NCBI GenBank assembly: GCA_002269645.1
Contig: NIVC01001377.1
Coordinates: 124,001 to 188,000 of the forward strand
Direction: 5' to 3'
DNA length: 64,000 bases
DNA from: Macrostomum lignano
Taxonomy: Eukaryota
Part shown: in pieces, positions 18,856 to 45,814 of the stretch
Layout of the letters: each line of letters opens with the position of its first letter
How positions within the stretch are numbered: position 1 is the stretch's first letter
Made by a program: the position numbers and the translations under genes
The notes under the pieces: model-generated
Databases searched by the model: none
Seen by the model: the letters and a program-made list of their open reading frames with translations, nothing else
What the model was told of the DNA's origin: nothing

Positions 18856-18990
18856 GAGAGAGGAGAGGAGCGAAGAGGAGAGGAGAGGAGAGGAGAGGAG
18901 AGGAGAGGAGAGGAGAGGAGAGGAGAGGAGAGGAGAGGAGAGGAGAGGAGAGGAGAGGAGAGGAGAGGAGAGGAGAGGAAAGGAGAAGAG
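18856..18990. repeat. (GGAGA)n microsatellite
   Basis: Pure pentanucleotide run. Confidence 0.95.
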
Positions 18991-19864: not shown

Positions 19865-22250
19865 TCAATTTTGAGGACTCTGGCGGGCTTCATCAAGTCT
19901 CTTCAGCTTCTGCCTGACCCAGCCGATCTTCTCCTCGTCCTGTGTCTCCATGGCGACGCTTCTCTCTTTCTCGATCATCTCCATCTGCTGCAGGCTGAGC
20001 TTCACGTGCTCATGGAAGTCGCTATAGTGAGCCAGAGTGAGCAGCTCCTCCAAGTCCGGGTCTCCAAGCAGCTCTTCAATCCAAAGACCGAATGCGATTA
20101 CAGGTGCGCGATTGCGGAGCAGCTCAGCTTGGAGACTCCAGCTCAGGCAGCGGAAGTTCACGTACAGGTGGGAGGAGAGAGGCTGCGACAGTCTGGCCGT
20201 GAACAGAGTCTGCGTGAACTCGGGAAGGAATGGAAAGCGAGGCGGAGAGTCGCAGGGGAGGCAGAACCTCCACGCCCAGTCTGAGTCTGATGGCAATTCA
20301 GTAGACCTAAATTGATCTGTTTCAATATTCTGTGGCTTCAACCCTGAATCAACCTGATACTCAACCTGATGTCTCTGCAGCTCCATCGCGAGTCTTTCAG
20401 CCTCCTCAGATTCTCCGAACTTTAAATGTGTCATGGCGGTCATGCACAGGGCGGCGCACTTGCACCACTGCAGATGATGCAGGAGACTGAGCTGCCTCAT
20501 CAGGGTGTCTCTGTCGCTCGATTCCGACTGCAGCTCCCTCACACACTGGTGCACCACACTGTACACGTCTGCAAACTTGTAGTACATTTTTGGAGAATAC
20601 ATTCCTTTCCTGATCTCCGTGACAGCAGGCGGCGCTGTCAGAGGCAGCAGAGTGAACATGTGAAAGTAGAACTTCTCTGACTGCAGAGGTCTCACGAGTC
20701 TCCTCAGCTGCTCGGCCACTCCGCCGACGTCGCTTCTCAGCTCACAAAGTCGGTCTCGAACCCTGGCCTTTGTGTTGTCGAAGTCGCCGCCGATTCCAGC
20801 GTTCTTGAAGTAGAGCGGAGCGTCGGGCATGAAGAAGTGCGGCATGCACTCATCGGGCGAGCTGCTCGAGTCGATGAAGCTCAGCATCCTGTCGAGAGAC
20901 TCCTTGAGCAGAGCGATCAGATTGTGGGGCTGCCAAGCGTCAGTTTCAGGACCTGTGCCATGCTTCTCCAGCATAAAGAAGAGCAGAGTCTTTGCATGGT
21001 AGGTCTTGAGTCCAGGTGTGTCCAGAGTGTGCGGCAAGTGTCTCTTGAAGATGAACTTGATGAGTGTAAACAGCTGGCCCTGGACTGTGCTCAGCCGTCT
21101 CATGATGTATTTTTCTTGGAAGCTGAAGCTCACTCTGAGCTCGTTGGTCGAGCTCGGTCTGGTCGCCCGAACGAGGTGAACATCAGCACCGAATGGAAGC
21201 AGTTTTCTAATTCTGTCCTCACAGAAACTGCTGCAGCACTGGATCGCATGGCACGTGTCCTGTGCAGGCCGCACACCGCACGCCGTGGCTGTCACTGCAG
21301 GTTGGCTGCCTGCAGAGCGCAGTGAGCGGAAAATGGATTTGTGGGGAGTGAAAAACATGGGTTGGTTTGAAACTGCAGTTTTTCGCTTGGCTGGTTGGGA
21401 ATTTCAAGTTATATCATTAAGAAAAAAATATGAAAATTATTTAAGATATCGTTCGATTGAGGCCGTGTCATTTGATTGTCGACAAGTTATTATCAGGACT
21501 CAGTGCCCCGCAACGAGGCACCAATCAGGCAGTCAGGGCGGCTTCGGTTTATTTTGTTTGAAATTTTCCAAGTGAGAGCGGCTGCACCTCAGCAGAGCCA
21601 TGCCGCCTACCGTGGGTCACACAAGCGCCGCTGCACCCACTCTGCTACCATCGGAGCCTGTGAATTCAAAACCCAATGGCCCGGCTCAGCCAGTCGGCAT
21701 CAGAGTTTTCTTTTCAATTTCGCCTGCCGCTTGTTTCAGCACCCAAGCCGACATTCGCAGTCACAGAAGCTGCTGGAGGCTGGGCGCCACTCAGTTGCGA
21801 ATTTAAAATTGAGCAAAGTTAATGGCTTCCAGTTGCATGCGGATCTCAGCATTCTGATGATGAACCCAGCCTCACTCACCTGCTCCCGCTGTCACCTGTG
21901 CGTGGCCCTCCGTGACCAGCAGCCGAGTGGCGGCTCTGCAGGAGTCTTTCTTTGTTTTGCAGCCACCTTCCAGATGGAACTCTTGCCCAGCAACCAGCAC
22001 AGTCCAGTCAATGTCCGAGTCTGCAGCTGTCCTGCCGTTCACTTGCACCAGACTGTTGGCCCAGCCCTCTGCGTAGCTGCCCGTCATCTGCCTGCGATAG
22101 CCATCCTGTGTGAGGACTCGAGCGACTCCTTGCAGCCAGTCAGCCAGACTCTGCTGACACTTTGCTCTCTGCTCGGTGAATCCCGCATCGCTGAGCAGTC
22201 GATGAAGCTCCTCGCTCAGGCGCCTGTCTTGCTGGGAGTCGTCTGAGAGC
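19865..22250 (-). CDS. cGAS/Mab-21-like nucleotidyltransferase domain (cGLR) plus a helical C-terminal extension
   Basis: NTase core MTGSYAEG...DSDIDW and a candidate third Asp in QDTCHAIQC. Mab-21 C-lobe motifs HLVRA, ELRVSFSFQEK, LKTYHAKTLLFFMLE and CMPHFFMP. Confidence 0.88.
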
Positions 22251-25200
22251 CTGGAATGATGCGAGATGCGTGTGGGTGACTTGTTCAGAGTTGGATGGAC
22301 AAAACAAGCAGGAGAGCTGAGAGTGCAGCTGCTGCAGCACTCAGACTGGCATCTCAAGCAGGAGAGCTGAGAGTCCAACCCAATCTCAACTCTCCTGAGT
22401 TTCGCTGCAATTTCTGCCCCAAGCTGCCAGCCTGTCGGAAGGCGCAATGCGGCAGTGAAAGCTGAACCGGTCAGACTCACCGATGGAGGCCCGAATCCAA
22501 GCGGTGAGCGGCTGCCTGCCGGGCCTCTGGGCTTCTGCAATGCGGGAAGGAAAGACAAGGAAAGACTAAGTTGAGTCTGAGATTCTGATGCGGCACAAAT
22601 CACTTCATTGAGTCGGAAACTCCAATTTTTTTCACGCGTAGAGCCGAGGAGGCACAGCTTCATCAAAATACCGGCGCTTTTTCAGTTAAGAAATTCAAAT
22701 AGCGGAGAGAAGGGCGGGCAGAAGCAGATGACCGACAGAAAGCAGGCAATGAGCCAGAGAGAGCCGTTCGCCCCTGGCAATGAGCCAGAGAGAGCCGTTT
22801 GCCCCTGGCAATGAGCCAGAGAGAGCCGTTTGCCCCTGGCAATGAGCCAGAGAGAGCCGTTCGCCCCTGGCAATGAGCCAGAGAGAGCCGTTCGCCCCTG
22901 GCAATGAGCCAGAGAGAGCCGTTCGCCCCTGGCAATGAGTCAGAGAGAGCCGTTCGCCCCTGGCAATGAGCCAGAGAGAGCCATTCGCCCCTCGCAATGA
23001 GCCAGAGAGAGCCGTTCGCCCCTGGCAATGAGCCAGAGAAGCCACAAATTTAGCGCGGAACGGCCGGAGGGAGAAGCAAGAGACGGCAATGCAGACTCGT
23101 GAAAAATATCTTACAGCCCTGACTGCCCGGTATAAAAAAGTGCAAATCGCGAGTATGCTCGCTAATGGAAGCGATTGGACAATAAAGTGAAAAACTGGAA
23201 ACTGTGATTATTTTGTTTTTTACTCAAGCATTACATGCAAACAAAATATTTTTTCACATGAGCCCGCTTCACTCCTTCATTTTTTGCCATTCCGCGCTGT
23301 GGGTCACTAAAATTATCGCTTGTCTCATCCGAAAATGTAAAATTCAAAAAATCTTTCTGTGTCTTTTCTGTCTTCTCTTTCTCTTCCTTTCTTTCTTCTT
23401 AACTTTTTCCCTTGTCCCCGTGTTCGCCTCTTCTCCAAAAACCAAGCAGGCTTACATTTTATAACTGAAAAATTCTAACAAGATTTTTCTGATAAAGTTG
23501 CAGAAATGCTTCACTAAAGCACGATGCAGTACTGAAAGGATTCGCGCAATTCTCGCCTCACTCACCCCGCTCGACTGGCATCCAGCAGCCGCAGCACCTG
23601 CCACTGCTCAAATCGCTCTGCCACTTGCGCACACGTCAGACCCCGACCGTCTCGATGGCTGGCATCCGCTCCTCTGTCCATCAGAGCCTTGGCTGCTCGC
23701 ACGTGACCGGCTTCGCACGCTCGTGACAGAGCAGTCCGACCCTGACTGTCTTCAGCACGCACTGACGCACCGAGATCGATGAGTTTCTCAATGAGCTCGT
23801 GATGACCTGCATCAGCTGCCAGCATGAGAGCAGTGGCTCCAGTGCTGTCTGGCAGATCGACATGCTCTGTGCTAACTCGCTCATCATTGATCAGTGTGAC
23901 AGCAAGTGCGACGTGTCTTTGAGATATGGAGAGATGGAGCAGCTGTGTGATGTGAGCTGGCTGCATTCGAGAGAGGGTGTCGGTGAGAGCAGAGTTCCTG
24001 CCTTCGATGGCCATTGCTGCAATGAAGCTGAGGATGGTGCTGGATTGGAAGAGCCAGTCGGATTCGAGGCCGCCGAGGGAGGCAACCACATCCTCGTGAA
24101 GACGAGAGCAAGCCTTGACTGCGTATGGGAAACGGAGATTCGCTCTCTGATCCGGACTTGAGAGACACGAGATGCACCTAAAGACTTCCCACTGGCCATT
24201 TTCTGCAGCAGACTCGGCAGCGTCGATGCAGCAGCGATCTCTGTTTGCTTGTTCAGCGACTTGTGACACGAGAAACTTGACGACTTCCCACTCAAAACTT
24301 CTTGCAGCATATTTGGCAGTGTCGATGCAGAAGCGATCTCTGTTTGCTTGGTCAGCGACTTCTGGCACGAGAAACTTGACGACTTCCCACTCACGATTTC
24401 TTGCAGCAGATTCGGCAGCTTTGATGCAGCAGCGATCTCTGTTTGCTTGGTCAGCGACTTGTGACACGAGAAAATTGACGACTTCCCAATGACCATAAAA
24501 TACAGCAAGTTTGGCAGCGTCGATGCAGCACTGTTCTCTGTTTGCCTGGTCAGCGACTTGTGGCACGATAAACTTGACGACTTCCCACTCACGATTTCTT
24601 GCAGCAGATTCGGCAGCTTTGATGCAGCAGCGATCTCTGTTTGCTTGGTCAGCGACTTGTGACACGAGAAACTTGACGACTTCTAAGTGACCATTTCTTG
24701 CAGCAGGTTCGGCAACCTCGACGCAGCAGCGATCTCTGTTTGCTTGGTCAGCGACTTGTGGCACGATAAACTTGACGACTTCCCAGCCACGATTTCTTGC
24801 AGCAGATTCGGCAGCGTCGATGCAGCAGCGATCTCTGTTTGCTTGGTCAGCGACTTGTGACACGAGAAACTTGACGACTTCTAAGTGACCATTTCTTGCA
24901 GCAGGTTCGGCAGCGTCGATGCAGCAGCGATCTCTGTTTGCTTGGTCAGCGACTTGTGACACGAGAAACTTGACGACTTCTAAGTGACCATTTCTTGCAG
25001 AAGGTTCGGCAGCGTCGATGCAGCAGCGATCTCTGTTTGCTTGGTCAGCGACTTGTGACACGAGAAACTTGACGACTTCTAAGTGACCATTTGTTGCAGC
25101 AGATTCGGCAGCTTTGATGCAGCAGCGATCTCTGTTTGCTTGGTCAGCGACTTGTGGCACGAGAAACTTGACGACTTTTAAGTGACCATTTCTTGCAGCA

Positions 25201-28200
25201 GATTTGGCAGCTTCGATGCAGCAGCGATCTCTGTTTGCTTGGTCAGCGACTTGTGACACGAGAAACTTGACGACTTCTGAGTGACCATTTGTTGCAGCAG
25301 ATTCGGCAGCTTTGATGCAGCAGCGATCTCTGTTTGCTTGGTCAGCGACTTGTGACACGAGAAACTTGACGACTTTCCAATGACCATAAAATACAGCAAG
25401 TTTGGCAGCGTCGATGCAGCACTGTTCTCTGTTTGCCTGGTCAGCGACTTCTGGCACGAGAAACTTGACGACTTCCCACTCACAAAATCTTGCAGCAGAT
25501 TCGGCAGCGTCGATGCAGCAGCGATCTCTGTTTGCTTGGTCAGGGACTTGTGACACGAGAAACTTGACGACTTCCCACTCACGATTTCTTGCAGCAGATT
25601 CGGCAGCGTCGATGCAGCAGCGATCTCTGTTTGCTTGGTCAGCGACTTGTGGCACGATAAACTTGACGACTTCTAAGTGACCATTTCTTGCAGCAGGTTC
25701 GGCAGCCTCGACACAGCAGCGATCTCTGTTTGCTTGGTCAGCGACTTGTGACACGAGAAACTTGACGACTTCTGAGTGACCATTTGTTGCAGCAGATTCG
25801 GAAGCGTCGATGCAGCAGCGATCTTTATTTGCATGGTCAGTGACTTGTGACACAAGAAACTTGACAACTTCTAAGTGACCATTTCTTGCAGAAGGTTCGG
25901 CAGCGTCGATGCAGCAGCGATCTCTGTTTGCTTGGTCAGCGACTTGTGACACGGGAAACTTGACGACTTCTAAGTGACCATTTCTTGCAGCAGGTTCGGC
26001 AGCCTCGACGCAGCAGCGATCTCTGTTTGCTTGGTCAGCGACTTGTGACACGAGAAACTTGACGACTTCTAAGTGACCATTTCTTGCAGCAGGTTCGGCA
26101 GCCTCGACGCAGCAGCGATCTCTGTTTGCTTGGTCAGCGACTTGTGACACGAGAAACTTGACGACTTCTAACTGACCATTTCTTGCAGCAGGTTCGGCAA
26201 CCTCGACGCAGCAGCGATCTCTGTTTGCTTGGTCAGCGACTTGTGACACGAGAAACTTGACGACTTCCCACTCACAAAATCTTGCAGCAGATTCGGCAGC
26301 TTTGATGCAGCAGCGATCTCTGTTTGCTTGGTCAGCGACTTGTGACACGATAAACTTGACGACTTCCCACTCACGATTTCTTGCAGCAGATTCGGCAGCG
26401 TCGATGCAGCAGCGATCTCTGTTTGCTTGGTCAGCGACTTGTGACACGAGAAACTTGACGACTTCTAAGTGACCATTTCTTGCAGCAGGTTCGGCAGCCT
26501 CGACGCAGCAGCGATCTCTGTTTGCTTGGTCAGTGACTTGTGACACGAGAAACTTGACGACTTCTAAGTGACCATTTCTTGCAGCAGGTTCGGCAGCCTC
26601 GACGCAGCAGCGATCTCTGTTTGCTTGGTCAGCGACTTGTGACACGAGAAACTTGACGACTTCCCACTCACAAAATCTTGCAGCAGATTCGGCAGCTTTG
26701 ATGCAGCAGCGATCTCTGTTTGCTTGGTCAGCGACTTGTGACACGAGAAACTTGACGATTTCTGAGTGACCATTTGTTGCAGCAGATTCGGCAGCGTCGA
26801 TGCAGCAGCGATCTCTGTTTGCTTGGTCAGCGACTTGTGACACGAGAAACTTGACGACTTCTAAGTGACCACTTCTTGCAGTAGATTCGGCAGCTTTGAT
26901 GCAGCAGCGATCTCTGTTTGCTTGGTCAGCGACTTGTGACACGAGAAACTTGATGATTTCTGAGTGACCATTTCTTGCAGCACGTTCGGCAGCCTCGACG
27001 CAACAGCGATCTCTGTTTGCTTGGTCAGCGACTTGTGGCACGAGAAACTTGACGAGTTCCCACTCACAACTTCTTGCAGCAGATTTGGCAGCGTCGATGC
27101 AGCAGCTATCTCTGTTTGCTTGGTCAGCGACTTGTGGCACGAGAAACTTGACGACTTCCCACTGATCATTTTCTACAGCAGATTTGGCAGCGTCGATGCA
27201 GCAGCGATCTCTGTTTGCTTGGTCAGCGACTTGTGGCACGAGAAACTTGACGACTTTTAAGTGACCATTTCTTGCAGCACTTTCGGCAGCCTCGACGCAA
27301 CAGCGATCTCTGTTTGCTTGGTCAGCGACTTGTGGCACGAGAAACTTGACGAGTTCCCACTCACAACTTCTTGCAGCAGATTTGGCAGCGTCGATGCAGC
27401 AGCGATCTCTGTTTGCTTGGTCAGCGACTTGTGGCACGAGAAACTTGACGACTTCCCACTGACCATTTTCTACAGCAGATTTGGCAGCGTCGATGCAGCA
27501 GCGATCTCTGTTTGCTTGGTCAGCGACTTGTGACACGAGAAACTTAACGACTTTCCGCTGACGATATCTTGCAGCAGGTTCGGCAGCCTTGACGCAACAG
27601 CGATCTCTGTTTGCTTGGTCAGCGACTTGTGACACGAGAAACTTGACGACTTCTAAGTGACCATTTCCTGCAGCAGGTTCGGCAGCCTCGACGCAACAGC
27701 GATCTCTGTTTGCTTGGTCAGCGACTTGTGACACGAGAAACTTGACGACTTTCCGCCGACGATATCTTGCAGCAGGTTTTGCAGCCTCGACGCAGCAGCG
27801 ATCTCTGTTTGCTTGGTCAGCGACTTGTGACACGAGAAACTTGACGACTTCTAAGTGACCATTTGTTGCAGCAGATTCGGCAGCTTTGATGCAGCAGCGA
27901 TCTCTGTTTGCTTGGTCAGCGACTTGTGGCACGAGAAACTTGACGACTTCTAAGTGACCATTTCTTGCAGCAGGTTCGGCAGCCTCGGCGCAGCAGCGAT
28001 CTCTGTTTGCTTGGTCAGCGACTTGTGACACAAGAAACTTGACGACTTCTAAGTGACCATTTCTTGCAGCAGGTTCGGCAGCCTCGACGCAGCAGCGATC
28101 TCTGTTTGCTTGGTCAGCGACTTGTGGCACGAGAAACTTGACGACTTCCCACTCACGATTTCTTGCAGCAGATTCGGCAGCGTCGATGCAGCAGCGATCT

Positions 28201-31200: not shown

Positions 31201-34200
31201 GAAACTAGACGACTTTTAAGTGACCATTTCTTGCAGCACTTTCGGCAGCCTCGACGCAACAGCGATCTCTGTTTGCTTGGTCAGCGACTTGTGGCACGAG
31301 AAACTTGACGAGTTCCCACTCACAACTTCTTGCAGCAGATTTGGCAGCGTCGATGCAGCAGCGATCTCTGTTTGCTTGGTCAGCGACTTGTGGCACGAGA
31401 AACTTGACGACTTCCCACTGACCATTTTCTACAGCAGATTTGGCAGCGTCGATGCAGCAGCGATCTCTGTTTGCTTGGTCAGCGACTTGTGACACGAGAA
31501 ACTTACGACTTTCCGCTGACGATATCTTGCAGCAGGTTTGGCAGCCTTGACGCAACAGCGATCTCTGTTTGCTTGGTCAGCGACTTGTGACACGAGAAAC
31601 TTGACGACTTCTAAGTGACCATTTCCTGCAGCAGGTTCGGCAGCCTCGACGCAACAGCGATCTCTGTTTGCTTGGTCAGCGACTTGTGACACGAGAAACT
31701 TGACGACTTTCCGCCGACGATATCTTGCAGCAGGTTTTGCAGCCTCGACGCAGCAGCGATCTCTGTTTGCTTGGTCAGCGACTTGTGACACGAGAAACTT
31801 GACGACTTCTAAGTGACCATTTGTTGCAGCAGATTCAGCAGCTTTGATGCAGCAGCGATCTCTGTTTGCTTGGTCAGCGACTTGTGGCACGAGAAACTTG
31901 ACGACTTCTAAGTGACCATTTCTTGCAGCAGGTTCGGCAGCCTCGGCGCAGCAGCGATCTCTGTTTGCTTGGTCAGCGACTTGTGACACAAGAAACTTGA
32001 CGACTTCTAAGTGACCATTTCTTGCAGCAGGTTCGGCAGCCTCGACGCAGCAGCGATCTCTGTTTGCTTGGTCAGCGACTTGTGGCACGAGAAACTTGAC
32101 GACTTCCCACTCACGATTTCTTGCAGCAGATTCGGCAGCGTCGATGCAGCAGCGATCTCTGTTTGCTTGGTCAGCGACTTGTGGCACGATAAACTTGACG
32201 ACTTCCCACTCACGATTTCTTGCAGCAGATTCGGCAGCGTCGATGCAGCAGCGATCTCTGTTTGCTTGGTCAGCGACTTGTGACACGAGAAACTTGACGA
32301 CTTTCCGCTGACGATATCTTGCAGCAGGTTCATCAGCCTTGACGCAGCAGCGATCTCTGTTTGCTTGGTCAGCGACTTGTGACACGAGAAACTTGACGAC
32401 TTCCCACTCACAAAATCTTGCAGCAGATTCGGCAGCGTCGATGCAGCAGCGATCTCTGTTTGCTTGGTCAGCGACTTGTGGCACGAGAAACTTGACGAGT
32501 TCTGAGTGACCATTTGTTGCAGCAGATTCGGCAGCTTTGATGCAGCAGCGATCTCTGTTTGCTTGGTCAGCGACTTGTGGCACGAGAAACTTGACGACTT
32601 TTAAGTGACCATTTGTTGCAGCAGATTCGGCAGCTTTGATGCAGCAGCGATCTCTGTTTGCTTGGTCAGCGACTTGTGGCACGAGAAACTTGACGACTTC
32701 TAAGTGACCATTTCTTGCAGCAGGTTCGGCAGCCTCGGCGCAGCAGCGATCTCTGTTTGCTTGGTCAGCGACTTGTGACACAAGAAACTTGACGACTTCT
32801 AAGTGACCATTTCTTGCAGCAGGTTCGGCAGCCTCGACGCAGCAGCGATCTCTGTTTGCTTGGTCAGCGACTTGTGGCACGAGAAACTTGACGACTTCCC
32901 ACTCACGATTTCTTGCAGCAGATTCGGCAGCGTCGATGCAGCAGCGATCTCTGTTTGCTTGGTCAGCGACTTGTGGCACGATAAACTTGACGACTTCCCA
33001 CTCACGATTTCTTGCAGCAGATTCGGCAGCGTCGATGCAGCAGCGATCTCTGTTTGCTTGGTCAGCGACTTGTGACACGAGAAACTTGACGACTTTCCGC
33101 TGACGATATCTTGCAGCAGGTTCATCAGCCTTGACGCAGCAGCGATCTCTGTTTGCTTGGTCAGCGACTTGTGACACGAGAAACTTGACGACTTCCCACT
33201 CACAAAATCTTGCAGCAGATTCGGCAGCGTCGATGCAGCAGCGATCTCTGTTTGCTTGGTCAGCGACTTGTGGCACGAGAAACTTGACGAGTTCTGAGTG
33301 ACCATTTGTTGCAGCAGATTCGGCAGCTTTGATGCAGCAGCGATCTCTGTTTGCTTGGTCAGCGACTTGTGGCACGAGAAACTTGACGACTTTTAAGTGA
33401 CCATTTGTTGCAGCAGATTCGGCAGCTTTGATGCAGCAGCGATCTCTGTTTGCTTGGTCAGCGACTTGTGATACGAGAAACTTGACGCCTTCCCACTGAC
33501 CATTTCTTGCAGTAGATTCGGCAGCTTTGATGCAGCAGCGATCTCTGTTTGCTTGGTCAGCGACTTGTGACACGAGAAACTTGACGATTTCTGAGTGACC
33601 ATTTGTTGCAGCAGATTCGGCAGCGTCGATGCAGCAGCGATCTCTGTTTGCTTGGTCAGCGACTTGTGGCACGAGAAACTTGACGACTTCTAAGTGACCA
33701 TTTCTTGCAGCACGTTCGGCAGCCTCGACGCAACAGCGATCTCTGTTTGCTTGGTCAGCGACTTGTGGCACGTGAAACTTGACGAGTTCCCACTCAAGAC
33801 TTCTTGCAGCAGATTCGGCAGCGTCGATGCAGCAGCGATCTCTGTTTGCTTGGTCAGCGACTTGTGGCACGAGAAACTTGACGACTTTTAAGTGACCATT
33901 TCTTGCAGCAGATTTGGCAGCTTCGATGCAGCAGCGATTCTGTTTGCTGGTCAGCGACTTGTGACACGAGAAAATTGACGACTTCTAAGTGACCATTTCT
34001 TGCAGCAGATTCGGCAGCTAAGATGCAGCAGCGATCTCTGTTTGCTTGGTCAGTGACTTGTGACACGAGAAACTTGACGACTTCTAAGTGACCATTTCTT
34101 GCAGCAGGTTCGGCAGCCTCGACGCAGCAGCGATCTCTGTTTGCTTGGTCAGCGACTTGTGACACGAGAAACTTGACGACTTCCCACTCACAAAATCTTG

Positions 34201-37200
34201 CAGCAGATTCGGCAGCTTTGATGCAGCAGCGATCTCTGTTTGCTTGGTCAGCGACTTGTGACACGAGAAACTTGACGACTTTCCGCTGACGATATCTTGC
34301 AGCAGGTTCGGCAGCCTTGACGCAGCAGCGATCTCTGTTTGCTTGGTCAGCGACTTGTGACACGAGAAACTTGACGACTTCCCACTCACAAAATCTTGCA
34401 GCAGATTCGGCAGCGTCGATGCAGCAGCGATCTCTGTTTGCTTGGTCAGCGACTTGTGGCACGAGAAACTTGACGAGTTCTGAGTGACCATTTGTTGCAG
34501 CAGATTCGGCAGCTTTGATGCAGCAGCGATCTCTGTTTGCTTGGTCAGCGACTTGTGGCACGAGAAACTTGACGACTTTTAAGTGACCATTTGTTGCAGC
34601 AGATTCGGAGCTTTGATGCAGCAGCGATCTCTGTTTGCTTGGTCAGCGACTTGTGGCACGAGAAACTTGACGACTTTTAAGTGACCATTTCTTGCAGCAG
34701 ATTTGGCAGCTTCGATGCAGCAGCGATCTCTGTTTGCTTGGTCAGCGACTTGTGACACGAGAAACTTGACGACTTCTGAGTGACCATTTGTTGCAGCAGA
34801 TTCGGCAGCTTTGATGCAGCAGCGATCTCTGTTTGCTTGGTCAGCGACTTGTGACACGAGAAACTTGACGACTTTCCAATGACCATAAAATACAGCAAGT
34901 TTGGCAGCGTCGATGCAGCACGTTCTCTGTTTGCTGGTCAGCGACTTCTGGCACGAGAAACTTGACGACTTCCCACTCACAAAATCTTGCAGCAGATTCG
35001 GCAGCGTCGATGCAGCAGCGATCTCTGTTTGCTTGGTCAGCGACTTGTGACACGAGAAACTTGACGACTTCCCACTCACGATTTCTTGCAGCAGATTCGG
35101 CAGCGTCGATGCAGCAGCGATCTCTGTTTGCTTGGTCAGCGACTTGTGGCACGATAAACTTGACGACTTCTAAGTGACCATTTCTTGCAGCAGGTTCGGC
35201 AGCCTCGACACAGCAGCGATCTCTGTTTGCTTGGTCAGCGACTTGTGACACGAGAAACTTGACGACTTCTGAGTGACCATTTGTTGCAGCAGATTCGGAG
35301 CGTCGATGCAGCAGCGATCTTTTTTGCTGGTCAGTGACTTGTGACACAAGAAACTTGACGACTTCTAAGTGACCATTTCTTGCAGAAGGTTCGGCAGCGT
35401 CGATGCAGCAGCGATCTCTGTTTGCTTGGTCAGCGACTTGTGACACGGAAACTTGACGACTTCTAAGTGACCATTTCTTGCAGCAGGTTCGGCAGCCTCG
35501 ACGCAGCAGCGATCTCTGTTTGCTTGGTCAGCGACTTGTGACACGAGAAACTTGACGACTTCTAAGTGACCATTTCTTGCAGCAGGTTCGGCAGCCTCGA
35601 CGCAGCAGCGATCTCTGTTTGCTTGGTCAGCGACTTGTGACACGAGAAACTTGACGACTTCTAACTGACCATTTCTTGCAGCAGGTTCGGCAGCCTCGAC
35701 GCAGCAGCGATCTCTGTTTGCTTGGTCAGCGACTTGTGACACGAGAAACTTGACGACTTCCCACTCACAAAATCTTGCAGCAGATTCGGCAGCTTTGATG
35801 CAGCAGCGATCTCTGTTTGCTTGGTCAGCGACTTGTGACACGAGAAACTTGACGACTTCCCACTCACGATTTCTTGCAGCAGATTCGGCAGCGTCGATGC
35901 AGCAGCGATCTCTGTTTGCTTGGTCAGCGACTTGTGACACGAGAAACTTGACGACTTCTAAGTGACCATTTCTTGCAGCAGGTTCGGCAGCCTCGACGCA
36001 GCAGCGATCTCTGTTTGCTTGGTCAGCGACTTGTGACACGAGAAACTTGACGACTTCTAAGTGACCATTTCTTGCAGCAGGTTCGGCAGCCTCGACGCAG
36101 CAGCGATCTCTGTTTGCTTGGTCAGCGACTTGTGACACGAGAAACTTGACGACTTCCCACTCACAAAATCTTGCAGCAGATTCGGCAGCTTTGATGCAGC
36201 AGCGATCTCTGTTTGCTTGGTCAGCGACTTGTGACACGAGAAACTTGACGATTTCTGAGTGACCATTTGTTGCAGCAGATTCGGCAGCGTCGATGCAGCA
36301 GCGATCTCTGTTTGCTTGGTCAGCGACTTGTGACACGAGAAACTTGACGACTTCTAAGTGACCACTTCTTGCAGTAGATTCGGCAGCTTTGATGCAGCAG
36401 CGATCTCTGTTTGCTTGGTCAGCGACTTGTGACACGAGAAACTTGACGACTTCTAAGTGACCACTTCTTGCAGTAGATTCGGCAGCTTTGATGCAGCAGC
36501 GATCTCTGTTTGCTTGGTCAGCGACTTGTGACACGAGAAACTTGACGATTTCTGAGTGACCATTTCTTGCAGCAGTTCGGCAGCCTTGACGCAACAGCGA
36601 TCTCTGTTTGCTTGGTCAGCGACTTGTGACACGAGAAACTTGACGACTTCTAAGTGACCATTTCTTGCAGCAGGTTCGGCAGCCTCGACGCAGCAGCGAT
36701 CTCTGTTTGCTTGGTCAGCGACTTGTGACACGAGAAACTTGACGACTTTCCGCTGACGATATCTTGCAGCAGGTTCGCAGCCTCGACGCAGCAGCGATCT
36801 CTGTTTGCTTGGTCAGCGACTTGTGACACGAGAAACTTGACGACTTCTAAGTGACCATTTGTTGCAGCAGATTCGCAGCTTTGATGCAGCAGCGATCTCT
36901 GTTTGCTTGGTCAGCGACTTGTGGCACGAGAAACTTGACGACTTCTAAGTGACCATTTCTTGCAGCAGGTTCGGCAGCCTCGGCGCAGCAGCGATCTCTG
37001 TTTGCTTGGTCAGCGACTTGTGACACAAGAAACTTGACGACTTCTAAGTGACCATTTCTTGCAGCAGGTTCGGCAGCCTCGACGCAGCAGCGATCTCTGT
37101 TTGCTTGGTCAGCGACTTGTGGCACGAGAAACTTGACGACTTCCCACTCACGATTTCTTGCAGCAGATTCGGCAGCGTCGATGCAGCAGCGATCTCTGTT

Positions 37201-40200
37201 TGCTTGGTCAGCGACTTGTGGCACGATAAACTTGACGACTTCCCACTCACGATTTCTTGCAGCAGATTCGGCAGCGTCGATGAGCAGCGATCTCTGTTTG
37301 CTTGGTCAGCGACTTGTGACACGAGAAACTTGACGACTTTCCGCTGACGATATCTTGCAGCAGGTTCATCAGCCTTGACGCAGCAGCGATCTCTGTTTGC
37401 TTGGTCAGCGACTTGTGACACGAGAAACTTGACGACTTCCCACTCACATCTTGCAGCAGATTCGGCAGCGTCGATGCAGCAGCGATCTCTGTTTGCTTGG
37501 TCAGCGACTTGTGGCACGAGAAACTTGACGAGTTCTGAGTGACCATTTGTTGCAGCAGATTCGGCAGCTTTGATGCAGCAGCGATCTCTGTTTGCTTGGT
37601 CAGCGACTTGTGGCACGAGAAACTTGACGACTTCTAAGTGACCATTTCTTGCAACACTTTCGGCAGCCTCGACGCAGCAGCGATCTCTGTTTGCTTGGTC
37701 AGCGACTTGTGGCACGAGAAACTTGACGACTTCCCACTCACGATTTTTTGCAGCAGATTCGGCAGCGTCGATGCAGCAGCGATCTCTGTTTGCTTGGTCA
37801 GCGACTTGTGACACGAGAAACTTGACGACTTTCCGCTGACGATAACTTGCAGCAGGTTCGGCAGCCTTGACGCAGCAGCGATCTCTGTTTGCTTGGTCAG
37901 CGACTTGTGACACGAGAAACTTGACGACTTCCCACTCACAAAATCTTGCAGCAGATTCGGCAGCGTCGATGCAGCAGCGATCTCTGTTTGCTTGGTCAGC
38001 GACTTGTGGCACGAGAAACTTGACGACTTCTGAGTGACCATTTGTTGCAGCAGATTCGGCAGCTTTGATGCAGCAGCGATCTCTGTTTGCTTGGTCAGCG
38101 ACTTGTGGCACGAGAAACTTGACGACTTTTAAGTGACCATTTGTTGCAGCAGATTCGGCAGCTTTGATGCAGCAGCGATCTCTGTTTGCTTGGTCAGCGA
38201 CTTGTGATACGAGAAACTTGACGCCTTCCCACTGACCATTTCTTGCAGTAGATTCGGCAGCTTTGATGCAGCAGCGATCTCTGTTTGCTTGGTCAGCGAC
38301 TTGTGACACGAGAAACTTGACGACTTTTAAGTGACCATTTGTTGCAGCAGATTCGGCAGCTTTGATGCAGCAGCGATCTCTGTTTGCTTGGTCAGCGACT
38401 TGTGGCACGAGAAACTTGACGACTTTTAAGTGACCATTTCTTGCAGCAGATTTGGCAGCTTCGATGCAGCAGCGATCTCTGTTTGCTTGGTCAGCGACTT
38501 GTGACACGAGAAACTTGACGACTTCTGAGTGACCATTTGTTGCAGCAGATTCGGCAGCTTTGATGCAGCAGCGATCTCTGTTTGCTTGGTCAGCGACTTG
38601 TGACACGAGAAACTTGACGACTTTCCAATGACCATAAAATACAGCAAGTTTGGCAGCGTCGATGCAGCACTGTTCTCTGTTTGCTGGTCAGCGACTTCTG
38701 GCACGAGAAACTTGACGACTTCCCACTCACAAAATCTTGCAGCAGATTCGGCAGCGTCGATGCAGCAGCGATCTCTGTTTGCTTGGTCAGGACTTGTGAC
38801 ACGAGAAACTTGACGACTTCCCACTCACGATTTCTTGCAGCAGATTCGGCAGCGTCGATGCAGCAGCGATCTCTGTTTGCTTGGTCAGCGACTTGTGGCA
38901 CGATAAACTTGACGACTTCTAAGTGACCATTTCTTGCAGCAGGTTCGGCAGCCTCGACACAGCAGCGATCTCTGTTTGCTTGGTCAGCGACTTGTGACAC
39001 GAGAAACTTGACGACTTCTGAGTGACCATTTGTTGCAGCAGATTCGGAAGCGTCGATGCAGCAGCGATCTTTTTTGCTGGTCAGTGACTTGTGACACAGA
39101 AACTTGACAACTTCTAAGTGACCATTTCTTGCAGAAGGTTCGGCAGCGTCGATGCAGCAGCGATCTCTGTTTGCTTGGTCAGCGACTTGTGACACGGAAA
39201 CTTGACGACTTCTAAGTGACCATTTCTTGCAGCAGGTTCGGCAGCCTCGACGCAGCAGCGATCTCTGTTTGCTTGGTCAGCGACTTGTGACACGAGAAAC
39301 TTGACGACTTCTAAGTGACCATTTCTTGCAGCAGGTTCGGCAGCCTCGACGCAGCAGCGATCTCTGTTTGCTTGGCCAGCGACTTGTGACACGAGAAACT
39401 TGACGACTTCTAACTGACCATTTCTTGCAGCAGGTTCGGCAACCTCGACGCAGCAGCGATCTCTGTTTGCTTGGTCAGCGACTTGTGACACGAGAAACTT
39501 GACGACTTCCCACTCACAAAATCTTGCAGCAGATTCGGCAGCTTTGATGCAGCAGCGATCTCTGTTTGCTTGGTCAGCGACTTGTGACACGATAAACTTG
39601 ACGACTTCCCACTCACGATTTCTTGCAGCAGATTCGGCAGCGTCGATGCAGCAGCGATCTCTGTTTGCTTGGTCAGCGACTTGTGACACGAGAAACTTGA
39701 CGACTTCTAAGTGACCATTTCTTGCAGCAGGTTCGGCAGCCTCGACGCAGCAGCGATCTCTGTTTGCTTGGTCAGTGACTTGTGACACGAGAAACTTGAC
39801 GACTTCTAAGTGACCATTTCTTGCAGCAGGTTCGGCAGCCTCGACGCAGCAGCGATCTCTGTTTGCTTGGTCAGCGACTTGTGACACGAGAAACTTGACG
39901 ACTTCCCACTCACAAAATCTTGCAGCAGATTCGGCAGCTTTGATGCAGCAGCGATCTCTGTTTGCTTGGTCAGCGACTTGTGACACGAGAAACTTGACGA
40001 TTTCTGAGTGACCATTTGTTGCAGCAGATTCGGCAGCGTCGATGCAGCAGCGATCTCTGTTTGCTTGGTCAGCGACTTGTGACACGAGAAACTTGACGAC
40101 TTCTAAGTGACCACTTCTTGCAGTAGATTCGGCAGCTTTGATGCAGCAGCGATCTCTGTTTGCTTGGTCAGCGACTTGTGACACGAGAAACTTGACGACT

Positions 40201-42079
40201 TCTAAGTGACCACTTCTTGCAGTAGATTCGTCAGCGTTGATGCAGCAGCGATCTCTGTTTGCTTGGTCAGCGACTTGTGACACGAGAAACTTGATGATTT
40301 CTGAGTGACCATTTCTTGCAGCACGTTCGGCAGCCTTAACGCAACAGCGATCTCTGTTTGCTTGGTCAGCGACTTGTGACACGAGAAACTTGACGACTTC
40401 TAAGTGACCATTTCTTGCAGCAGGTTCGGCAGCCTCGACGCAACAGCGATCTCTGTTTGCTTGGTCAGCGACTTGTGACACGAGAAACTTGACGACTTTC
40501 CGCCGACGATATCTTGCAGCAGGTTTTGCAGCCTCGACGCAGCAGCGATCTCTGTTTGCTTGGTCAGCGACTTGTGACACGAGAAACTTGACGACTTCTA
40601 AGTGACCATTTGTTGCAGCAGATTCAGCAGCTTTGATGCAGCAGCGATCTCTGTTTGCTTGGTCAGCGACTTGTGGCACGAGAAACTTGACGACTTCTAA
40701 GTGACCATTTCTTGCAGCAGGTTCGGCAGCCTCGGCGCAGCAGCGATCTCTGTTTGCTTGGTCAGCGACTTGTGACACAAGAAACTTGACGACTTCTAAG
40801 TGACCATTTCTTGCAGCAGGTTCAGCAGCCTCGACGCAGCAGCGATCTCTGTTTGCTTGGTCAGCGACTTGTGGCACGAGAAACTTGACGACTTCCCACT
40901 CACGATTTCTTGCAGCAGATTCGGCAGCGTCGATGCAGCAGCGATCTCTGTTTGCTTGGTCAGCGACTTGTGGCACGAGAAACTTGACGACTTTTAAGTG
41001 ACCATTTGTTGCAGCAGATTCGGCAGCTTTGATGCAGCAGCGATCTCTGTTTGCTTGGTCAGCGACTTGTGATACGAGAAACTTGACGCCTTCCCACTGA
41101 CCATTTCTTGCAGTAGATTCGGCAGCTTTGATGCAGCAGCGATCTCTGTTTGCTTGGTCAGCGACTTGTGACACGAGAAACTTGATGATTTCTGAGTGAC
41201 CATTTGTTGCAGCAGATTCGGCAGCGTCGATGCAGCAGCGATCTCTGTTTGCTTGGTCAGCGACTTGTGGCACGAGAAACTTGACGACTTCTAAGTGACC
41301 ATTTCTTGCAGCACGTTCGGCAGCCTCGACGCAACAGCGATCTCTGTTTGCTTGGTCAGCGACTTGTGGCACGTGAAACTTGACGAGTTCCCACTCAAGA
41401 CTTCTTGCAGCAGATTCGGCAGCGTCGATGCAGCAGCGATCTCTGTTTGCTTGGTCAGCGACTTGTGGCACGAGAAACTTGACGACTTTTAAGTGACCAT
41501 TTCTTGCAGCAGATTTGGCAGCTTCGATGCAGCAGCGATTTCTGTTTGCTGGGTCAGCGACTTGTGACACGAGAAAATTGACGACTTCTAAGTGACCATT
41601 TCTTGCAGCAGATTCGGCAGCTAAGATGCAGCAGCGATCTCTGTTTGCTTGGTCAGCGACATGTGGCACGAGAAACTTGACGTCTTTTAAGCGACCATTT
41701 GTTGCAGCATCTGCAGCAGCTTGTACGACTTCTAAGTGACCATCTTGTGCAGCCCGTACAGCTTTTTGTGAGATGTCAGTCACGGCTGCTGTCAGAGTGG
41801 CAGATGTCAGTCACGGCTGCTGTCAGAGTGGCAGATGTCAGTCACGGCTGCTGTCAGAGTGGCAGGTGTTTCAAAGGTTTGTGCAGCCGGTTGGCAGAAA
41901 GATTTTACCGCCTCATCTCTCAACTGCCCCCCCCCTTTTGCAGCCTCTGGCGAGGCCACCCCCTGACCACCCCGGCCTGAGCAGCCGAAACTTCTCTCCC
42001 GAGCATGAGCGCTGAGTCCGCCGCCTTCGCCTCTGTGCACCCAGCATGGCAACGGAGAGGCTGCGGCTGCAGCGGCCAC
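19865..42079 (-). CDS. Giant ankyrin-repeat / cGAS-like (Mab-21 family) nucleotidyltransferase fusion. Model: ~42079-23566, 22534-22481, 22250-21880, 21309-19865 (~6,700 aa if indels are corrected)
   Basis: Donors GTGAGT at 23565, 22480 and 21879 and acceptors TTGCAG, TTCCAG and CTGCAG give phases 2/2, 2/2 and 1/1, keeping one frame from the ANK exon to the NTase stop. The 5' end is uncertain, and there are many 1-bp indels between 29.5 and 39.2 kb. Confidence 0.8.
22745..23040. repeat. Intronic 31-bp minisatellite (GAGCCAGAGAGAGCCGTTCGCCCCTGGCAAT), ~9.5 copies
   Basis: GAGCCAG at 22751 and 22782. Lies in the intron between the ANK exon and the 54-nt linker exon. Confidence 0.93.
23566..24160 (-). 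CDS. Unique linker plus ~3 canonical ankyrin repeats closing the ANK exon
   Basis: DSTGATALMLAADAGHHELIEKLIDLGA, DSQGRTALSRACEAGHVRAAKALMDRGA and DGRGLTCAQVA match the ankyrin consensus. Confidence 0.9.
24160..41750 (-). repeat. Coding tandem array of 99-bp / 33-aa ankyrin-like units (VVKFLVSQVADQANRDRCCIDAAESAARNGHLE), ~177 copies
   Basis: 99-bp periodicity over ~17.5 kb. AAxxGHLEVVKFL is the ankyrin helix-turn-helix core. ORFs of 1991, 587, 813, 520 and 889 aa tile the array. Confidence 0.95.
41771..41864. repeat. 31-bp unit x3 (AGATGTCAGTCACGGCTGCTGTCAGAGTGGC) at the 5' end of the ANK ORF
   Basis: AGATGTCAG at 41771, 41802 and 41833. Confidence 0.92.
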
Positions 42080-42582
42080 CCCAAGCTGTACTTGATGAGG
42101 CTGAGCTGACCCATTGTGCCTCAGAGCAGTGTGAGATCGTTAAATGAATTTAATGGCCTACTGAGCGGTGTAAAATGCTGCTCAGTCCCGCAGTGCATCG
42201 GTTTGAGGAGGCGGTCAAATGTACAGAAAATGCATTGTTAAACTGGGTCAGTTTTCTCTCTCACTCTGCACTCTGGCCTTCTTAACTGCAGCAGCTGCAG
42301 AGCATTGGCTGGCTGGCAACAGGGCTCAGGCTCTCTCCCGGCTCTCCTATGCTTTCACCTGTTCCTCTCGTGCGCATCTCAGGCAGTTGAGAGTCTGCTG
42401 GGCTGAGTTTGGCGAGTGCATTTAGCAGCAATAATTGACATTCCTTTGCTTTTCTACAGAAGCCTCTTATCACTGCCGCTCCTTCTGTTTCATGTTTTGA
42501 ACAGGTGGCAACCGGCCCCTGTGGCAGGACTTGGCTTGCAAGCGCAGGCAGAAACTTGCAGTGACGATTCGATTAATGAAAC

Positions 42583-42913
42583 CATCCCTACAGTCACCAT
42601 CCCTACAGTCACCATCCCTACAGTCACCATCCCTACAGTCACCATCCCTACACTCCCATCCCTACAGTCACCATCCCTACACTCCCATCCCTACAGTCAC
42701 CATCCCTACAGTCACCATCCCTACAGTCACCATCCCTACAGTCACCATCCCTACAGTCACCATCCCTACAGTCACCATCCCTACAGTCACCATCCCTACA
42801 GTCACCATCCCTACAGTCACCATCCCTACAGTCACCATCCCTACAGTCACCATCCCTACAGTCACCATCCCTACAGTCACCATCCCTACAGTCACCATCC
42901 CTACAGTCACCAT
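42583..42913. repeat. 15-bp minisatellite (CATCCCTACAGTCAC)
   Basis: Direct periodicity, ~22 copies. Confidence 0.95.
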
Positions 42914-43021
42914 CAGAAATTGGCTTTTGTGTCTGCAATTGCATCATCGAAACTTGAGATTGAAGTCCTCTGACAAGGAAGAGATTGGTGCGACTTGACA
43001 CCAACGACTAGCTTGTAGTTC

Positions 43022-45755: not shown

Positions 45756-45814
45756 CTGAATCGCCTGAACTGGCACTGGAAATCACTCACAAAAATCGCC
45801 CCAAATCGCCCAAG

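What the first reader, a model, noticed from the sequence alone, without database searches (positions are those of the whole stretch)
19865..42079. Giant ankyrin-array / cGAS-like enzyme fusion: candidate variable innate-immune sensor
Seen: ~177 tandem 33-aa ankyrin-like units plus 3 canonical ANKs splice in frame (phases 2/2, 2/2, 1/1, via a 54-nt linker exon) to a Mab-21/cGAS-fold NTase with GS, DxD and a candidate third Asp. Established: cGAS-like receptors make cyclic dinucleotides upon ligand sensing, and ankyrin arrays are binding scaffolds. Inference: a ~6,700-aa receptor in which a very long, reshufflable sensor array gates second-messenger synthesis. I do not know of a cGLR with an array of this size and homogeneity, but I could not search for one.
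Basis: partly seen in the sequence, partly recalled or inferred. Interest (0 to 1): 0.95.

Follow-up and report, generated by a model that had tools for sequence, protein, structure and literature searches.

The report
Overgrown ankyrin array beside cGAS-like gene
This flatworm (Macrostomum lignano) gene belongs to a family of well over 100 ankyrin-repeat plus cGAS-like enzyme genes already listed as candidate immune sensors. Its 177-repeat array is in the assembly, but as assembled the array has no start codon and a broken reading frame, so the proposed 6,700-residue receptor is not supported.

Summary
The sequence features are largely real. A 99-bp array of 177 copies (24196-41709, minus strand) encodes ankyrin units. 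Three canonical ANKs, a 54-nt linker exon and two more exons follow. They encode a cGAS/Mab21-fold nucleotidyltransferase with conserved GS, DxD and a third Asp. The spliced product from Met 24014 equals GenBank PAA68678.1 (772 aa) exactly.

The array is not one ORF. It carries about 23 one-base deletions, all between 39.2 and 29.5 kb, and one TAG. About 87 bp holding the family's start codon are missing. The deletions look like long-read consensus errors: 18 of 23 sit where a sister unit has a rare base (P=1e-9).

The genome is Macrostomum lignano. At least 144 paralogues carry the same architecture, with 0 to 58 units; a duplicate about 98% identical has none. Hypervariable positions recur at the same codons in intact paralogues.

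Li et al. 2023 already catalogued this family as cGLRs and listed ANK-cGLR fusions. None of its members is named among the active enzymes they describe. No STING domain was found, though that test is weak.

Verdict: an extreme, probably non-translated or truncated member of a known kind. The undescribed part is the family's variable, near-identical ANK arrays.

The parts
41771..41869 (-). 31-bp minisatellite (3.2 copies) directly upstream of the array frame. It abuts the coding sequence at 41771/41770, where about 87 bp holding the family's ATG are missing.
   Evidence: TRF. Alignment with paralogues C247b and C278 shows the missing segment, '...ATAATGGACCAAAACCAAAGC...'. The same minisatellite flanks the paralogues.
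24195..41810 (-). Array of about 177 ankyrin-like units of 99 bp / 33 aa. The frame opens at 41810 after a stop and contains no ATG. It is built from large near-identical blocks.
   Evidence: There are 74 distinct DNA units and 72 distinct peptides. A 34-unit block is duplicated at an offset of 40 units with 3 substitutions and 4 gaps. An 18-19-unit block occurs three times.
29539..39218 (-). Interior of the array, holding all of the roughly 23 single-base deletions (frame changes).
   Evidence: Eighteen of 23 deletions lie within 1 nt of a site where the nearest intact sister unit has a non-consensus base (background 19%, binomial P=1.3e-9).
31205..31207 (-). In-frame TAG in unit 104. The sister unit 144 has AAG at this codon.
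23566..24194 (-). 3' end of the first coding exon: a cap-like region, the annotated start Met at 24014-24012 and three canonical ANK repeats (about 23840-23610). The donor GT follows 23566.
22535..23565 (-). Intron 1. It contains a 31-bp minisatellite at 22745-23043 (9.7 copies).
   Evidence: Conserved in paralogue C85, 98% identical.
22481..22534 (-). 54-nt linker exon encoding SPEARQAAAHRLDSGLHR.
   Evidence: Identical in PAA68678.1.
21880..22250 (-). Exon for the N-lobe of the NTase, with GSYAEG (22081-22064) and DSDID (22021-22007).
   Evidence: G, S and both Asp residues are kept in 37-41 of 41 family members.
19865..21309 (-). Last exon. It holds the third catalytic Asp in RPAQD (21271-21257), the Mab-21_C helical lobe, a family-specific C-terminal domain of about 245 aa, and the stop codon at 19865-19867.
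   Evidence: Mab-21_C E=3.3e-7. cGAS/MAB21L1 fold matches. The C-terminal domain model has pLDDT 88.9 and no PDB match better than E=0.12.
41810..42139 (-). It is in a different frame from the array and ends at about 41810. It is not homologous to the family's N-terminus.
   Evidence: The same element lies upstream of the true start in C85.

Best explanation
The locus is gene BOX15_Mlig024437g1 (GenBank PAA68678.1, annotated as 772 aa) of the flatworm Macrostomum lignano. It is one copy of a very large, apparently lineage-specific, tandemly clustered family.

The normal family architecture (shown) is a first coding exon that starts with MGQxxS or MDQxxS, then a variable run of near-identical 33-aa ankyrin units, then three canonical ANKs. 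A short linker exon and two further exons follow. They encode a cGAS/Mab21-fold nucleotidyltransferase with a complete GS / DxD / D signature and a family-specific C-terminal domain.

In this copy (shown) the unit array has grown to about 177 units (17.5 kb) by recent duplication of blocks of 8 to 34 units. A deletion of about 87 bp has removed the family's initiation codon.

The most likely consequence (inferred) is that the array is not translated here. The copy then makes only the 772-aa ANK3-NTase protein from Met 24014, or it is on its way to becoming a pseudogene. The interior frameshifts are most likely consensus errors of the PacBio/Canu assembly rather than mutations.

For the family (inferred), the ANK array is a binding scaffold whose inner-helix positions (unit codons 1-2, 24, 27 and 31-33) are diversified. 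The array grows and shrinks by unequal recombination. Ligand or partner binding is presumed to control the NTase, which would make a nucleotide signal. The product, the ligand and the receiver are all unknown.
For: - Organism and family: all homologues down to about 30% identity are M. lignano proteins.
- Family size: 88 matches to the last exon at 77-100% identity, from 84 scored of 661 candidates. There are 144 matches to the ANK tail, with open frames of 189-2177 aa.
- Intact long arrays exist in paralogues: C278 has an ORF of 2177 aa with 58 units and a start codon, and C2902, C247a and C247b have 1100-1160 aa.
- The nearest duplicate, C85 (exons 95-99% and introns 97-99.6% identical), has no units at all. 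C1823 has nine.
- The start codon is deleted in the window relative to C247b and C278, and there is no Met in any unit.
- The annotated protein PAA68678.1 equals my spliced model from Met 24014. That annotation is RNA-seq guided.
- Deletions are confined to the array interior and sit at variant sites. The assembly is Canu 1.4 polished only with short reads, and 64% of its bases are error-free by REAPR.
- Fold: the AF2 model of the 98% paralogue has pLDDT 88.3 and pTM 0.88. Its best PDB matches are cGAS and MAB21L1, E about 1e-6, TM 0.50-0.54 over 350-400 columns.
- Sequence: a profile without ANK hits cGLR1 8gjy at E=7.5e-5.
- The catalytic residues are conserved in 42 divergent members.
- Hypervariable codons are the same in the window and in four intact paralogue arrays. 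pN/pS is 2.05 in the window and 0.8-1.3 in the paralogues.
Against: - If the deletions are artefacts, about 5,900 codons could be open apart from one TAG. The recency of the duplications means openness says little either way.
- The M. lignano spliced leader ends in ATG (PMC8629364), so an ATG-less frame could in principle be initiated after trans-splicing. I found no in-frame acceptor with a pyrimidine tract in the first 110 nt, and only a bare AAG|TTT in each unit.
- The 87-bp deletion lies next to a minisatellite and could itself be an assembly fault.
- I saw no reads or transcripts.
- NTase activity is unproven. Five family members were cloned by Li et al., but no flatworm enzyme is named among the 15 active cGLRs in their main text.
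- No STING_LBD match was found in the genome.
Confidence: 0.5

Rival explanations
1. The array is a continuous ORF in the animal and is translated with the NTase as a protein of about 6,700 aa. The frameshifts, and perhaps the missing start, would be assembly errors, or initiation would use the AUG of the spliced leader.
For: - Eighteen of 23 deletions sit at variant sites, as expected of consensus errors.
- All deletions lie in the interior that is hardest to anchor, and the outer 898 and 2011 codons are open.
- An intact 58-unit paralogue shows that long arrays can be coding.
- The spliced leader ends in ATG.
- The assembly was polished only with short reads.
Against: - The canonical ATG segment is absent.
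- There is one TAG at 31207-31205.
- The RNA-seq-guided annotation begins at Met 24014.
- The array is three times longer than the largest open frame among at least 144 paralogues.
- The closest duplicate has lost the array and has an out-of-frame start, so this pair looks like decaying copies.
Confidence: 0.2
2. The size and order of the array are partly an assembly artefact. Near-identical blocks were laid down more often than they occur, and the true array is much shorter, within the family's usual range.
For: - A 34-unit block recurs at 99.8% identity and an 18-19-unit block occurs three times. Copies differ about as often by one-base gaps as by substitutions.
- Only 74 distinct units exist, or 52 clusters at one substitution or fewer.
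- The deletions imply that reads from different units were piled together.
- Only 64% of assembly bases are error-free.
Against: - The array lies inside one contig between unique flanks.
- Even the non-redundant set of 52-74 units is about as large as, or larger than, the longest intact paralogue array of 58 units.
- The intact C278 array shows similar internal redundancy, 35 distinct of 58 units.
- Block copies carry a few distinguishing substitutions.
Confidence: 0.25
3. The enzyme half is not a signalling cGLR. The family would be Mab21-like scaffolds or another kind of NTase with no cyclic-nucleotide product, and the expansion would be unrelated to immunity.
For: - No hit to the Mab-21 NTase model PF03281.
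- PDB sequence similarity is limited to the C-lobe.
- No STING domain was found.
- Li et al. state that most flatworms lack cGLRs, and they name no active flatworm enzyme in their main text.
- MAB21L1 is an equally good fold match.
Against: - G-S, D-x-D and the third Asp are kept in 37-41 of about 41 members down to 24% identity. According to Li et al., Mab21L1/2/3 lack a predicted functional active site.
- Li et al. classed these proteins as cGLRs with predicted complete active sites.
- Massive tandem expansion, many damaged copies and hypervariable repeat positions are typical of immune receptor families. This last point is my inference.
Confidence: 0.25

Closest known systems
ANK-cGLR fusion proteins catalogued by Li et al. 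2023 (PMC9980059), including M. lignano PAA68676.1 and PAA93208.1
   Same: Same family and architecture. PAA68676.1 carries the same locus tag as my hit P0010, which is 84% identical to the window's NTase and C-terminal region. N-terminal ANK repeats precede a cGAS-like NTase with a predicted complete active site.
   Different: In the text and tables held here I found no description of near-identical unit arrays, their copy-number range, their hypervariable positions or a 177-unit case. Only constructs starting near the NTase domain were cloned. The window's copy lacks a start codon for the array.
cGAS and Drosophila cGLR1 (solved structures 4k9b, 7uux, 8gjy)
   Same: Bilobal NTase fold (Foldseek E about 1e-6, TM about 0.5), a GS loop, acidic residues on neighbouring strands and a Mab-21_C helical lobe.
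   Different: Only 13-17% identity. The N-lobe is undetectable by PF03281. There is an extra C-terminal domain of 245 aa with no PDB match. The core has pI 8.3 and the whole protein is acidic. No ligand or product is known, and no STING was found.
MAB21L1 (5eom) and the canonical Mab-21 genes of M. lignano
   Same: Same fold superfamily.
   Different: M. lignano has three loci of a canonical Mab-21 that match PF03281 end to end. The ANK family is a separate, divergent branch that keeps the catalytic triad.
Long natural ankyrin arrays (ankyrin-R/B with 24 repeats, NOMPC with 29) and designed DARPins
   Same: A 33-residue register that aligns without gaps to Pfam Ank. The canonical ANKs superpose on DARPins at rmsd 1.6 Å. 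Unit positions 31 and 32 correspond to the two helix-1 positions randomised in DARPins, which is my own mapping from the register.
   Different: The units read DAAE where canonical repeats have TPLH. Their loop, QANRDRCC, is invariant. Units are about 90% identical to each other at the DNA level. Intact paralogue arrays reach 58 units and this one reaches 177, far beyond the arrays I know of (from memory, not searched).
Fungal NLR-type (STAND) receptors with highly similar ANK, TPR or WD40 repeats, and lamprey VLRs (recalled from memory, not tested)
   Same: Arrays of near-identical repeats with a few hypervariable positions. Repeat number changes by recombination. Large gene families show birth and death of copies.
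   Different: The effector module is different (NTase, not NACHT/NB-ARC). There is no evidence of somatic assembly. Immune function is untested here.

Membership tests
cGAS-like receptor (cGLR) / Mab21 NTase superfamily | Bilobal cGAS/Mab21 nucleotidyltransferase fold | tested here: met
   The AF2 model of PAA91513.1 (98% identical paralogue) has pLDDT 88.3. Its top PDB matches are cGAS and MAB21L1, E 7e-7 to 1e-5, TM(target) 0.47-0.54.
cGAS-like receptor (cGLR) / Mab21 NTase superfamily | Match to Pfam Mab-21_C (PF20266) above its cut-off | tested here: met
   Window exon: E=3.3e-7, 30.8 bits against a cut-off of 24.1. 38 of 42 family members match.
cGAS-like receptor (cGLR) / Mab21 NTase superfamily | Match to Pfam Mab-21 NTase domain (PF03281) | tested here: not met
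   No hit at E<=1 for the window exon or at E<=0.01 for any of 42 members. The genome search finds only three canonical Mab-21 loci. More distant relatives (E 1e-5 to 1e-9) do carry PF03281.
cGAS-like receptor (cGLR) / Mab21 NTase superfamily | Complete active site: G-S loop, [DE]x[DE] and a third acidic residue | tested here: met
   The window has GSYAEG, DSDID and RPAQD. In the family, G is kept in 41/41, S in 40/41, D245 in 37/41, D247 in 38/41 and D307 in 37/40. The Asp of GADVH is not conserved. Spatial proximity was not measured.
cGAS-like receptor (cGLR) / Mab21 NTase superfamily | Synthesis of a nucleotide second messenger on ligand binding | not testable with these tools
   Li et al. 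cloned five M. lignano members. The 15 active enzymes they describe come from insects, anemones, molluscs, hydras and corals.
cGAS-like receptor (cGLR) / Mab21 NTase superfamily | A cognate receptor (STING) encoded in the same genome | tested here: inconclusive
   PF15009 gave no match even at E<=10. The search is exon by exon and the control genomes also gave nothing.
Ankyrin repeat | 33-residue repeats matching Pfam Ank models | tested here: met
   Thirty array units: Ank_2 E=1.6e-87 in 20 stretches, Ank E=2.8e-54. The three terminal repeats: Ank E=7.8e-21.
Ankyrin repeat | TPLH-type signature at the start of helix 1 | tested here: not met
   Array units read D-A-A-E at the positions that align with T-P-L-H. 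This uses the register and the unit consensus. The three terminal repeats are canonical (TALMLAA, TALSRAC).
Single intact gene for a ~6,700-aa protein | Uninterrupted reading frame through the array | tested here: not met
   About 23 one-base deletions and one TAG. The longest open stretches are 898 and 2011 codons. The deletions are probably artefacts, so the true state is open.
Single intact gene for a ~6,700-aa protein | Initiation codon in frame with the array | tested here: not met
   About 87 bp holding the ATG are missing relative to paralogues. There is no in-frame ATG before 24014. ATG 42079 is out of frame.
Single intact gene for a ~6,700-aa protein | In-frame splicing of the ANK exon to the NTase exons | tested here: met
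   GT-AG junctions with phases 2, 2 and 1. Identical to the RNA-seq-guided annotation PAA68678.1.
Diversified repeat-array receptor families | Near-identical repeats with variation focused on a few surface positions, and copy number that differs between close paralogues | tested here: met
   Codons 1-2, 10, 24, 27-28 and 31-33 vary while codons 5-22 are nearly fixed. pN/pS is 2.05. The same positions vary in C278, C2902, C247a and C247b. Unit counts are 0, 9, 26, 58 and 177.
Diversified repeat-array receptor families | Demonstrated role in recognition or immunity | not testable with these tools
   I found no paper on this family in M. lignano beyond its listing as cGLRs.

The most novel reading that the evidence does not exclude
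Macrostomum lignano runs a repertoire of well over 100 ANK-array cGLR-like enzymes. In this reading, near-identical ankyrin units with hypervariable groove positions are shuffled, expanded and lost by unequal recombination, giving 0, 9, 58 and 177 units in close paralogues. That would generate recognition diversity feeding a nucleotide-signalling pathway that does not use a recognisable STING. The window's array, if its frameshifts are assembly errors and it is initiated through the ATG-ending spliced leader, would be by far the longest ankyrin array in any protein.
Probability: 0.2. Interest if true: 0.85.

Novelty: new variant of a known kind. Interest (0 to 1): 0.5.

Why it matters
cGLRs are a recently recognised class of animal pattern-recognition receptors. 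What most of them sense is unknown, and flatworms were thought mostly to lack them.

This family pairs a conserved cGAS-like active site with an unusually plastic ankyrin array. It has focused hypervariability, large copy-number swings between near-identical duplicates and many damaged copies. That looks like a receptor family evolving under diversifying pressure. M. lignano is also a transgenic and RNAi-tractable model, so the question of whether non-nucleic-acid ligands drive cGLR signalling, and through which receptor, could be tested directly.

For the scan itself, the case shows how a striking giant ORF in a long-read assembly can rest on a repeat whose frame, start and length all need read-level confirmation.

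Tried and rejected
It is in a different frame, stops at about 41810, and the 31-bp minisatellite has stops in two of its three phases. The same element lies upstream of the true start in C85.
- The GADVH Asp as the third catalytic residue: rejected. It is not conserved (Pro is the family consensus). The conserved one is the Asp of RPAxDxVxA.
- Single-sequence PDB search with the 604-aa C-terminal part: only a chance hit. A profile containing ANK was swamped by ankyrins. A profile without ANK gave the cGLR1 and cGAS hits.
- The C-terminal 245-aa domain: the model is confident, but no PDB fold matches better than E=0.12, with only weak TPR-like hits.
- The large annotated relatives (2,111-3,379 aa) as precedents for giant arrays: rejected. 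They contain few or no units, and P0061 looks like a chimeric prediction.
I replaced it with the open-frame lengths.
- Looking for a second, allelic copy of this array: no locus above 91% identity. The search did not list the window's own array either, so it is uninformative.
- The look-up of encoding contigs for PAA68678.1: nothing on record.
- STING search at E<=10: nothing, and the control was silent.
- In-frame trans-splice acceptors near the start of the array frame: the AG sites in the first 110 nt all give early stops. This was read by eye from the sequence.
- A transposon context: the neighbours are ordinary genes (WSC, RRM, two GPCRs), and paralogues lie in tandem clusters.

Full report
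**What is there**

TRF finds a 99-bp tandem array at 24196-41709 with 177.2 copies and 90% matches. On the minus strand one frame of the consensus reads HLEVVKFLVSQVADQANRDRCCIDAAESAARNG. I parsed 175 in-register units. Thirty of them score Ank_2 E=1.6e-87 and Ank E=2.8e-54, so 'ankyrin-like' is correct. The units align to the Pfam repeat without gaps in a 33-residue register, but they read DAAE where canonical repeats have TPLH.

Downstream in the same exon lie a cap-like stretch and three canonical ANKs. The exon ends at 23566 before GTGAGT. A 54-nt exon (22534-22481), a 371-nt exon (22250-21880) and a last exon (21309-19865) all have AG/GT borders and join in frame.

From the Met at 24014, this spliced product is identical, residue for residue, to GenBank PAA68678.1 (BOX15_Mlig024437g1, 772 aa). 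That annotation was built from RNA-seq-guided transcripts.

**What is not there**

The array is not one open frame. The minus strand changes frame about 20 times. Seventeen units are shorter or longer than 99 nt, because of about 23 single-base deletions, all between 39218 and 29539. One unit has an in-frame TAG at 31207-31205 where its sister unit has AAG. Only the outer parts are open: 898 codons at the 5' end and 2011 codons at the 3' end.

The frame opens at 41810 right after a stop and contains no ATG before 24014, because no unit contains Met. In paralogues the same exon begins with MGQNLSS, MGQKLSS or MDQNQS. Aligned with two of them, the window lacks about 87 bp that hold this ATG, and the 31-bp minisatellite abuts the coding sequence at 41771/41770.

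The ATG at 42079 belongs to another frame that stops at about 41810. The same element sits upstream of the true start in a paralogue.

**Are the frameshifts real?**

Probably not.
- The array consists of large near-identical blocks. A 34-unit block is repeated at an offset of 40 units with 3 substitutions and 4 gaps, an 18-19-unit block occurs three times, and there is an 8-unit higher-order repeat.
- Comparing damaged units with intact sister units, 18 of 23 deletions lie within one base of a site where the sister carries a rare, non-consensus base. The background expectation is 19% (binomial P=1.3e-9; examples). That is what a consensus caller does when reads from different units are piled together. 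It is not what random mutation does.
- The genome matches Mlig_3_7 (764 Mb). That assembly was made from PacBio reads with Canu 1.4 and polished only with short reads. REAPR scores 64% of its bases as error-free, and tandem repeats make up 15% of it.

The same facts cast doubt on the exact length and order of the array. The missing start segment and the TAG are different kinds of lesion, and I could not check them without reads.

**Family context**

Every homologue down to about 30% identity is from Macrostomum lignano.
- The last exon has 88 matches in the genome at 77-100% identity, from 84 scored of 661 candidates.
- The ANK tail has 144 matches, whose open frames range from 189 to 2177 aa. 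Twenty-three of them are 1000 aa or longer.
- Paralogues lie in tandem clusters, four of them on the window's own contig.
- Intact examples exist. C278 has a 2177-aa frame with a start codon and 58 units, followed by the NTase exon. C247b and C1823 are also intact at the N-terminus.
- Others are damaged. C2902 has ATT in place of ATG, and C247a is frameshifted.
- C85 is the closest duplicate (exons 95-99% and introns 97-99.6% identical). It has no units at all and an out-of-frame start. C1823 has nine units.

So the architecture is typical and unit number is highly unstable. The window holds the extreme case, about three times the largest open frame elsewhere.

**Variation among units**

The window has 74 distinct DNA units encoding 72 distinct peptides. 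Variation is concentrated at codons 1-4, 10, 23-24, 27-28 and 31-33, while codons 5-22 are almost invariant even at silent sites. Overall pN/pS is 2.05. The same positions are the most variable in four intact paralogue arrays, with pN/pS of 0.8-1.3.

In the ANK register, these positions fall in helix 1 and the inter-helix turn. They include the two helix-1 positions randomised in designed ankyrin binders. The finger loop (QANRDRCC) is fixed. This mapping is my inference. The pattern fits diversification of a binding surface in the family. In the window it may simply be inherited.

**The enzyme half**

Pfam finds Mab-21_C in the last exon (E=3.3e-7, above the cut-off) but not the Mab-21 NTase domain.

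An AlphaFold model of the 98% identical paralogue, built on 42 family members, is confident (pLDDT 88.3, pTM 0.88). Its best PDB matches are mouse and human cGAS and MAB21L1 (E about 1e-6, TM 0.47-0.54 over 350-400 columns), along with DARPins for the ANK part. A family profile without ANK hits cGLR1 (8gjy, E=7.5e-5) and cGAS (E=2e-3), through the C-lobe only.

G-S, D-x-D and the Asp of RPAxDxVxA are kept in 37-41 of about 41 members down to 24% identity. The Asp of GADVH is not conserved. The NTase core has pI 8.3, and the C-terminal extension and the units are acidic.

The last 245 residues form a confidently predicted domain (pLDDT 88.9) with no PDB match better than E=0.12.

**What is already known**

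Li et al. 2023 (PMC9980059) list ANK-cGLR fusions as a minor architecture. They state that most flatworms lack cGLRs other than Mab21.

Their Table S3 shows that they cloned five M. lignano proteins for their 140-enzyme screen. These include PAA68676.1, which has the same locus tag as my hit P0010 (84% identical to the window's NTase and C-terminal region), and PAA93208.1. The 15 active enzymes they describe come from other phyla.

I found no paper that describes the unit arrays. The genome gave no STING_LBD match even at E<=10, but that search is exon-wise and its controls were silent. Three loci encode a canonical Mab-21.

**Verdict**

The 6,700-aa protein is not supported at this locus. As assembled there is no start codon for the array, one stop codon, many (probably artefactual) frameshifts, and an annotation that begins after the array.

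The most likely state is a copy that is N-terminally truncated or decaying, and whose array has recently ballooned. I put this at 0.5. The giant protein remains possible at about 0.2, for instance if the start region is mis-assembled or if the ATG-ending spliced leader supplies initiation. Partial mis-assembly of the array is a non-exclusive rival at about 0.25.

The part worth following up is the family. It comprises well over 100 cGAS-like genes with unstable, near-identical ANK arrays that are hypervariable at fixed positions, in a tractable flatworm with no recognisable STING.

Noticed in passing
window 41771-41869 and 22745-23043; C85 (L009) and C1823 loci: Two different 31-bp minisatellites sit at fixed places in the gene, one just upstream of the start and one in intron 1. 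Both are kept in paralogues with different copy numbers (3.2 against 11.8, and 9.7 against 12.7). The start-codon deletion in the window abuts the upstream one.
   Followed up: partly
paralogues: P0010, C247a, C1823 and C85 against C278, C247b, P0014 and P0011: The family has two N-terminal types. MGQ(N/K)(L/Q)S fits the N-myristoylation consensus MGxxxS. MDQ(N/T)xS does not. This hints that only part of the family is membrane-anchored.
   Followed up: no
window 19868-20602 (minus strand): The C-terminal domain of about 245 aa is conserved in the family and is predicted with pLDDT 88.9. It has no significant structural match in the PDB (best E=0.12, weak TPR-like hits). Its function is unknown.
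   Followed up: yes
protein P0041 (M. lignano relative, 45% identical): This predicted protein joins the family's NTase and C-terminal region (residues 2-565) to ANK repeats and a caspase domain (Peptidase_C14, E=2.7e-25, residues 872-1094). It may be two neighbouring genes merged by the predictor, or a real link to cell death.
   Followed up: no
G000:C85:996748-1002811 (L009): This duplicate locus is 95-99% identical to the window's in exons and introns. It has lost the whole unit array, and its MGQKLSS start is out of frame with the ANK tail. It is annotated from an internal Met as PAA91513.1 (770 aa).
   Followed up: yes
G000:C2902:73399-76758 (L018): This paralogue has an open 1120-codon frame with 26-27 units, but ATT (Ile) stands where the family has the start ATG (HGSRTIGQNLSS). 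It is another array-bearing copy without its initiation codon.
   Followed up: partly
window 968-1510 (-), 45756-46547 (+), 49216-50049 (-), 57076-57993 (-): The neighbouring open frames match WSC, RRM_1 and two rhodopsin-type GPCRs (7tm_1). This is ordinary host gene context with no transposon signature.
   Followed up: partly
window 42581-42914, 43024-43276, 18858-18992, 18242-18435: The gene's flanks are dense with short tandem repeats: 15-bp x22, 27-bp x9, (GAGAG)27 and 57-bp x2. This agrees with the 15% tandem-repeat content reported for this genome.
   Followed up: no
window ~41925-41935 (minus strand): A run of nine G residues lies in the upstream open frame. Relative to C85, the frame shifts exactly here, which makes it a likely homopolymer length error or polymorphism.
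   Followed up: partly
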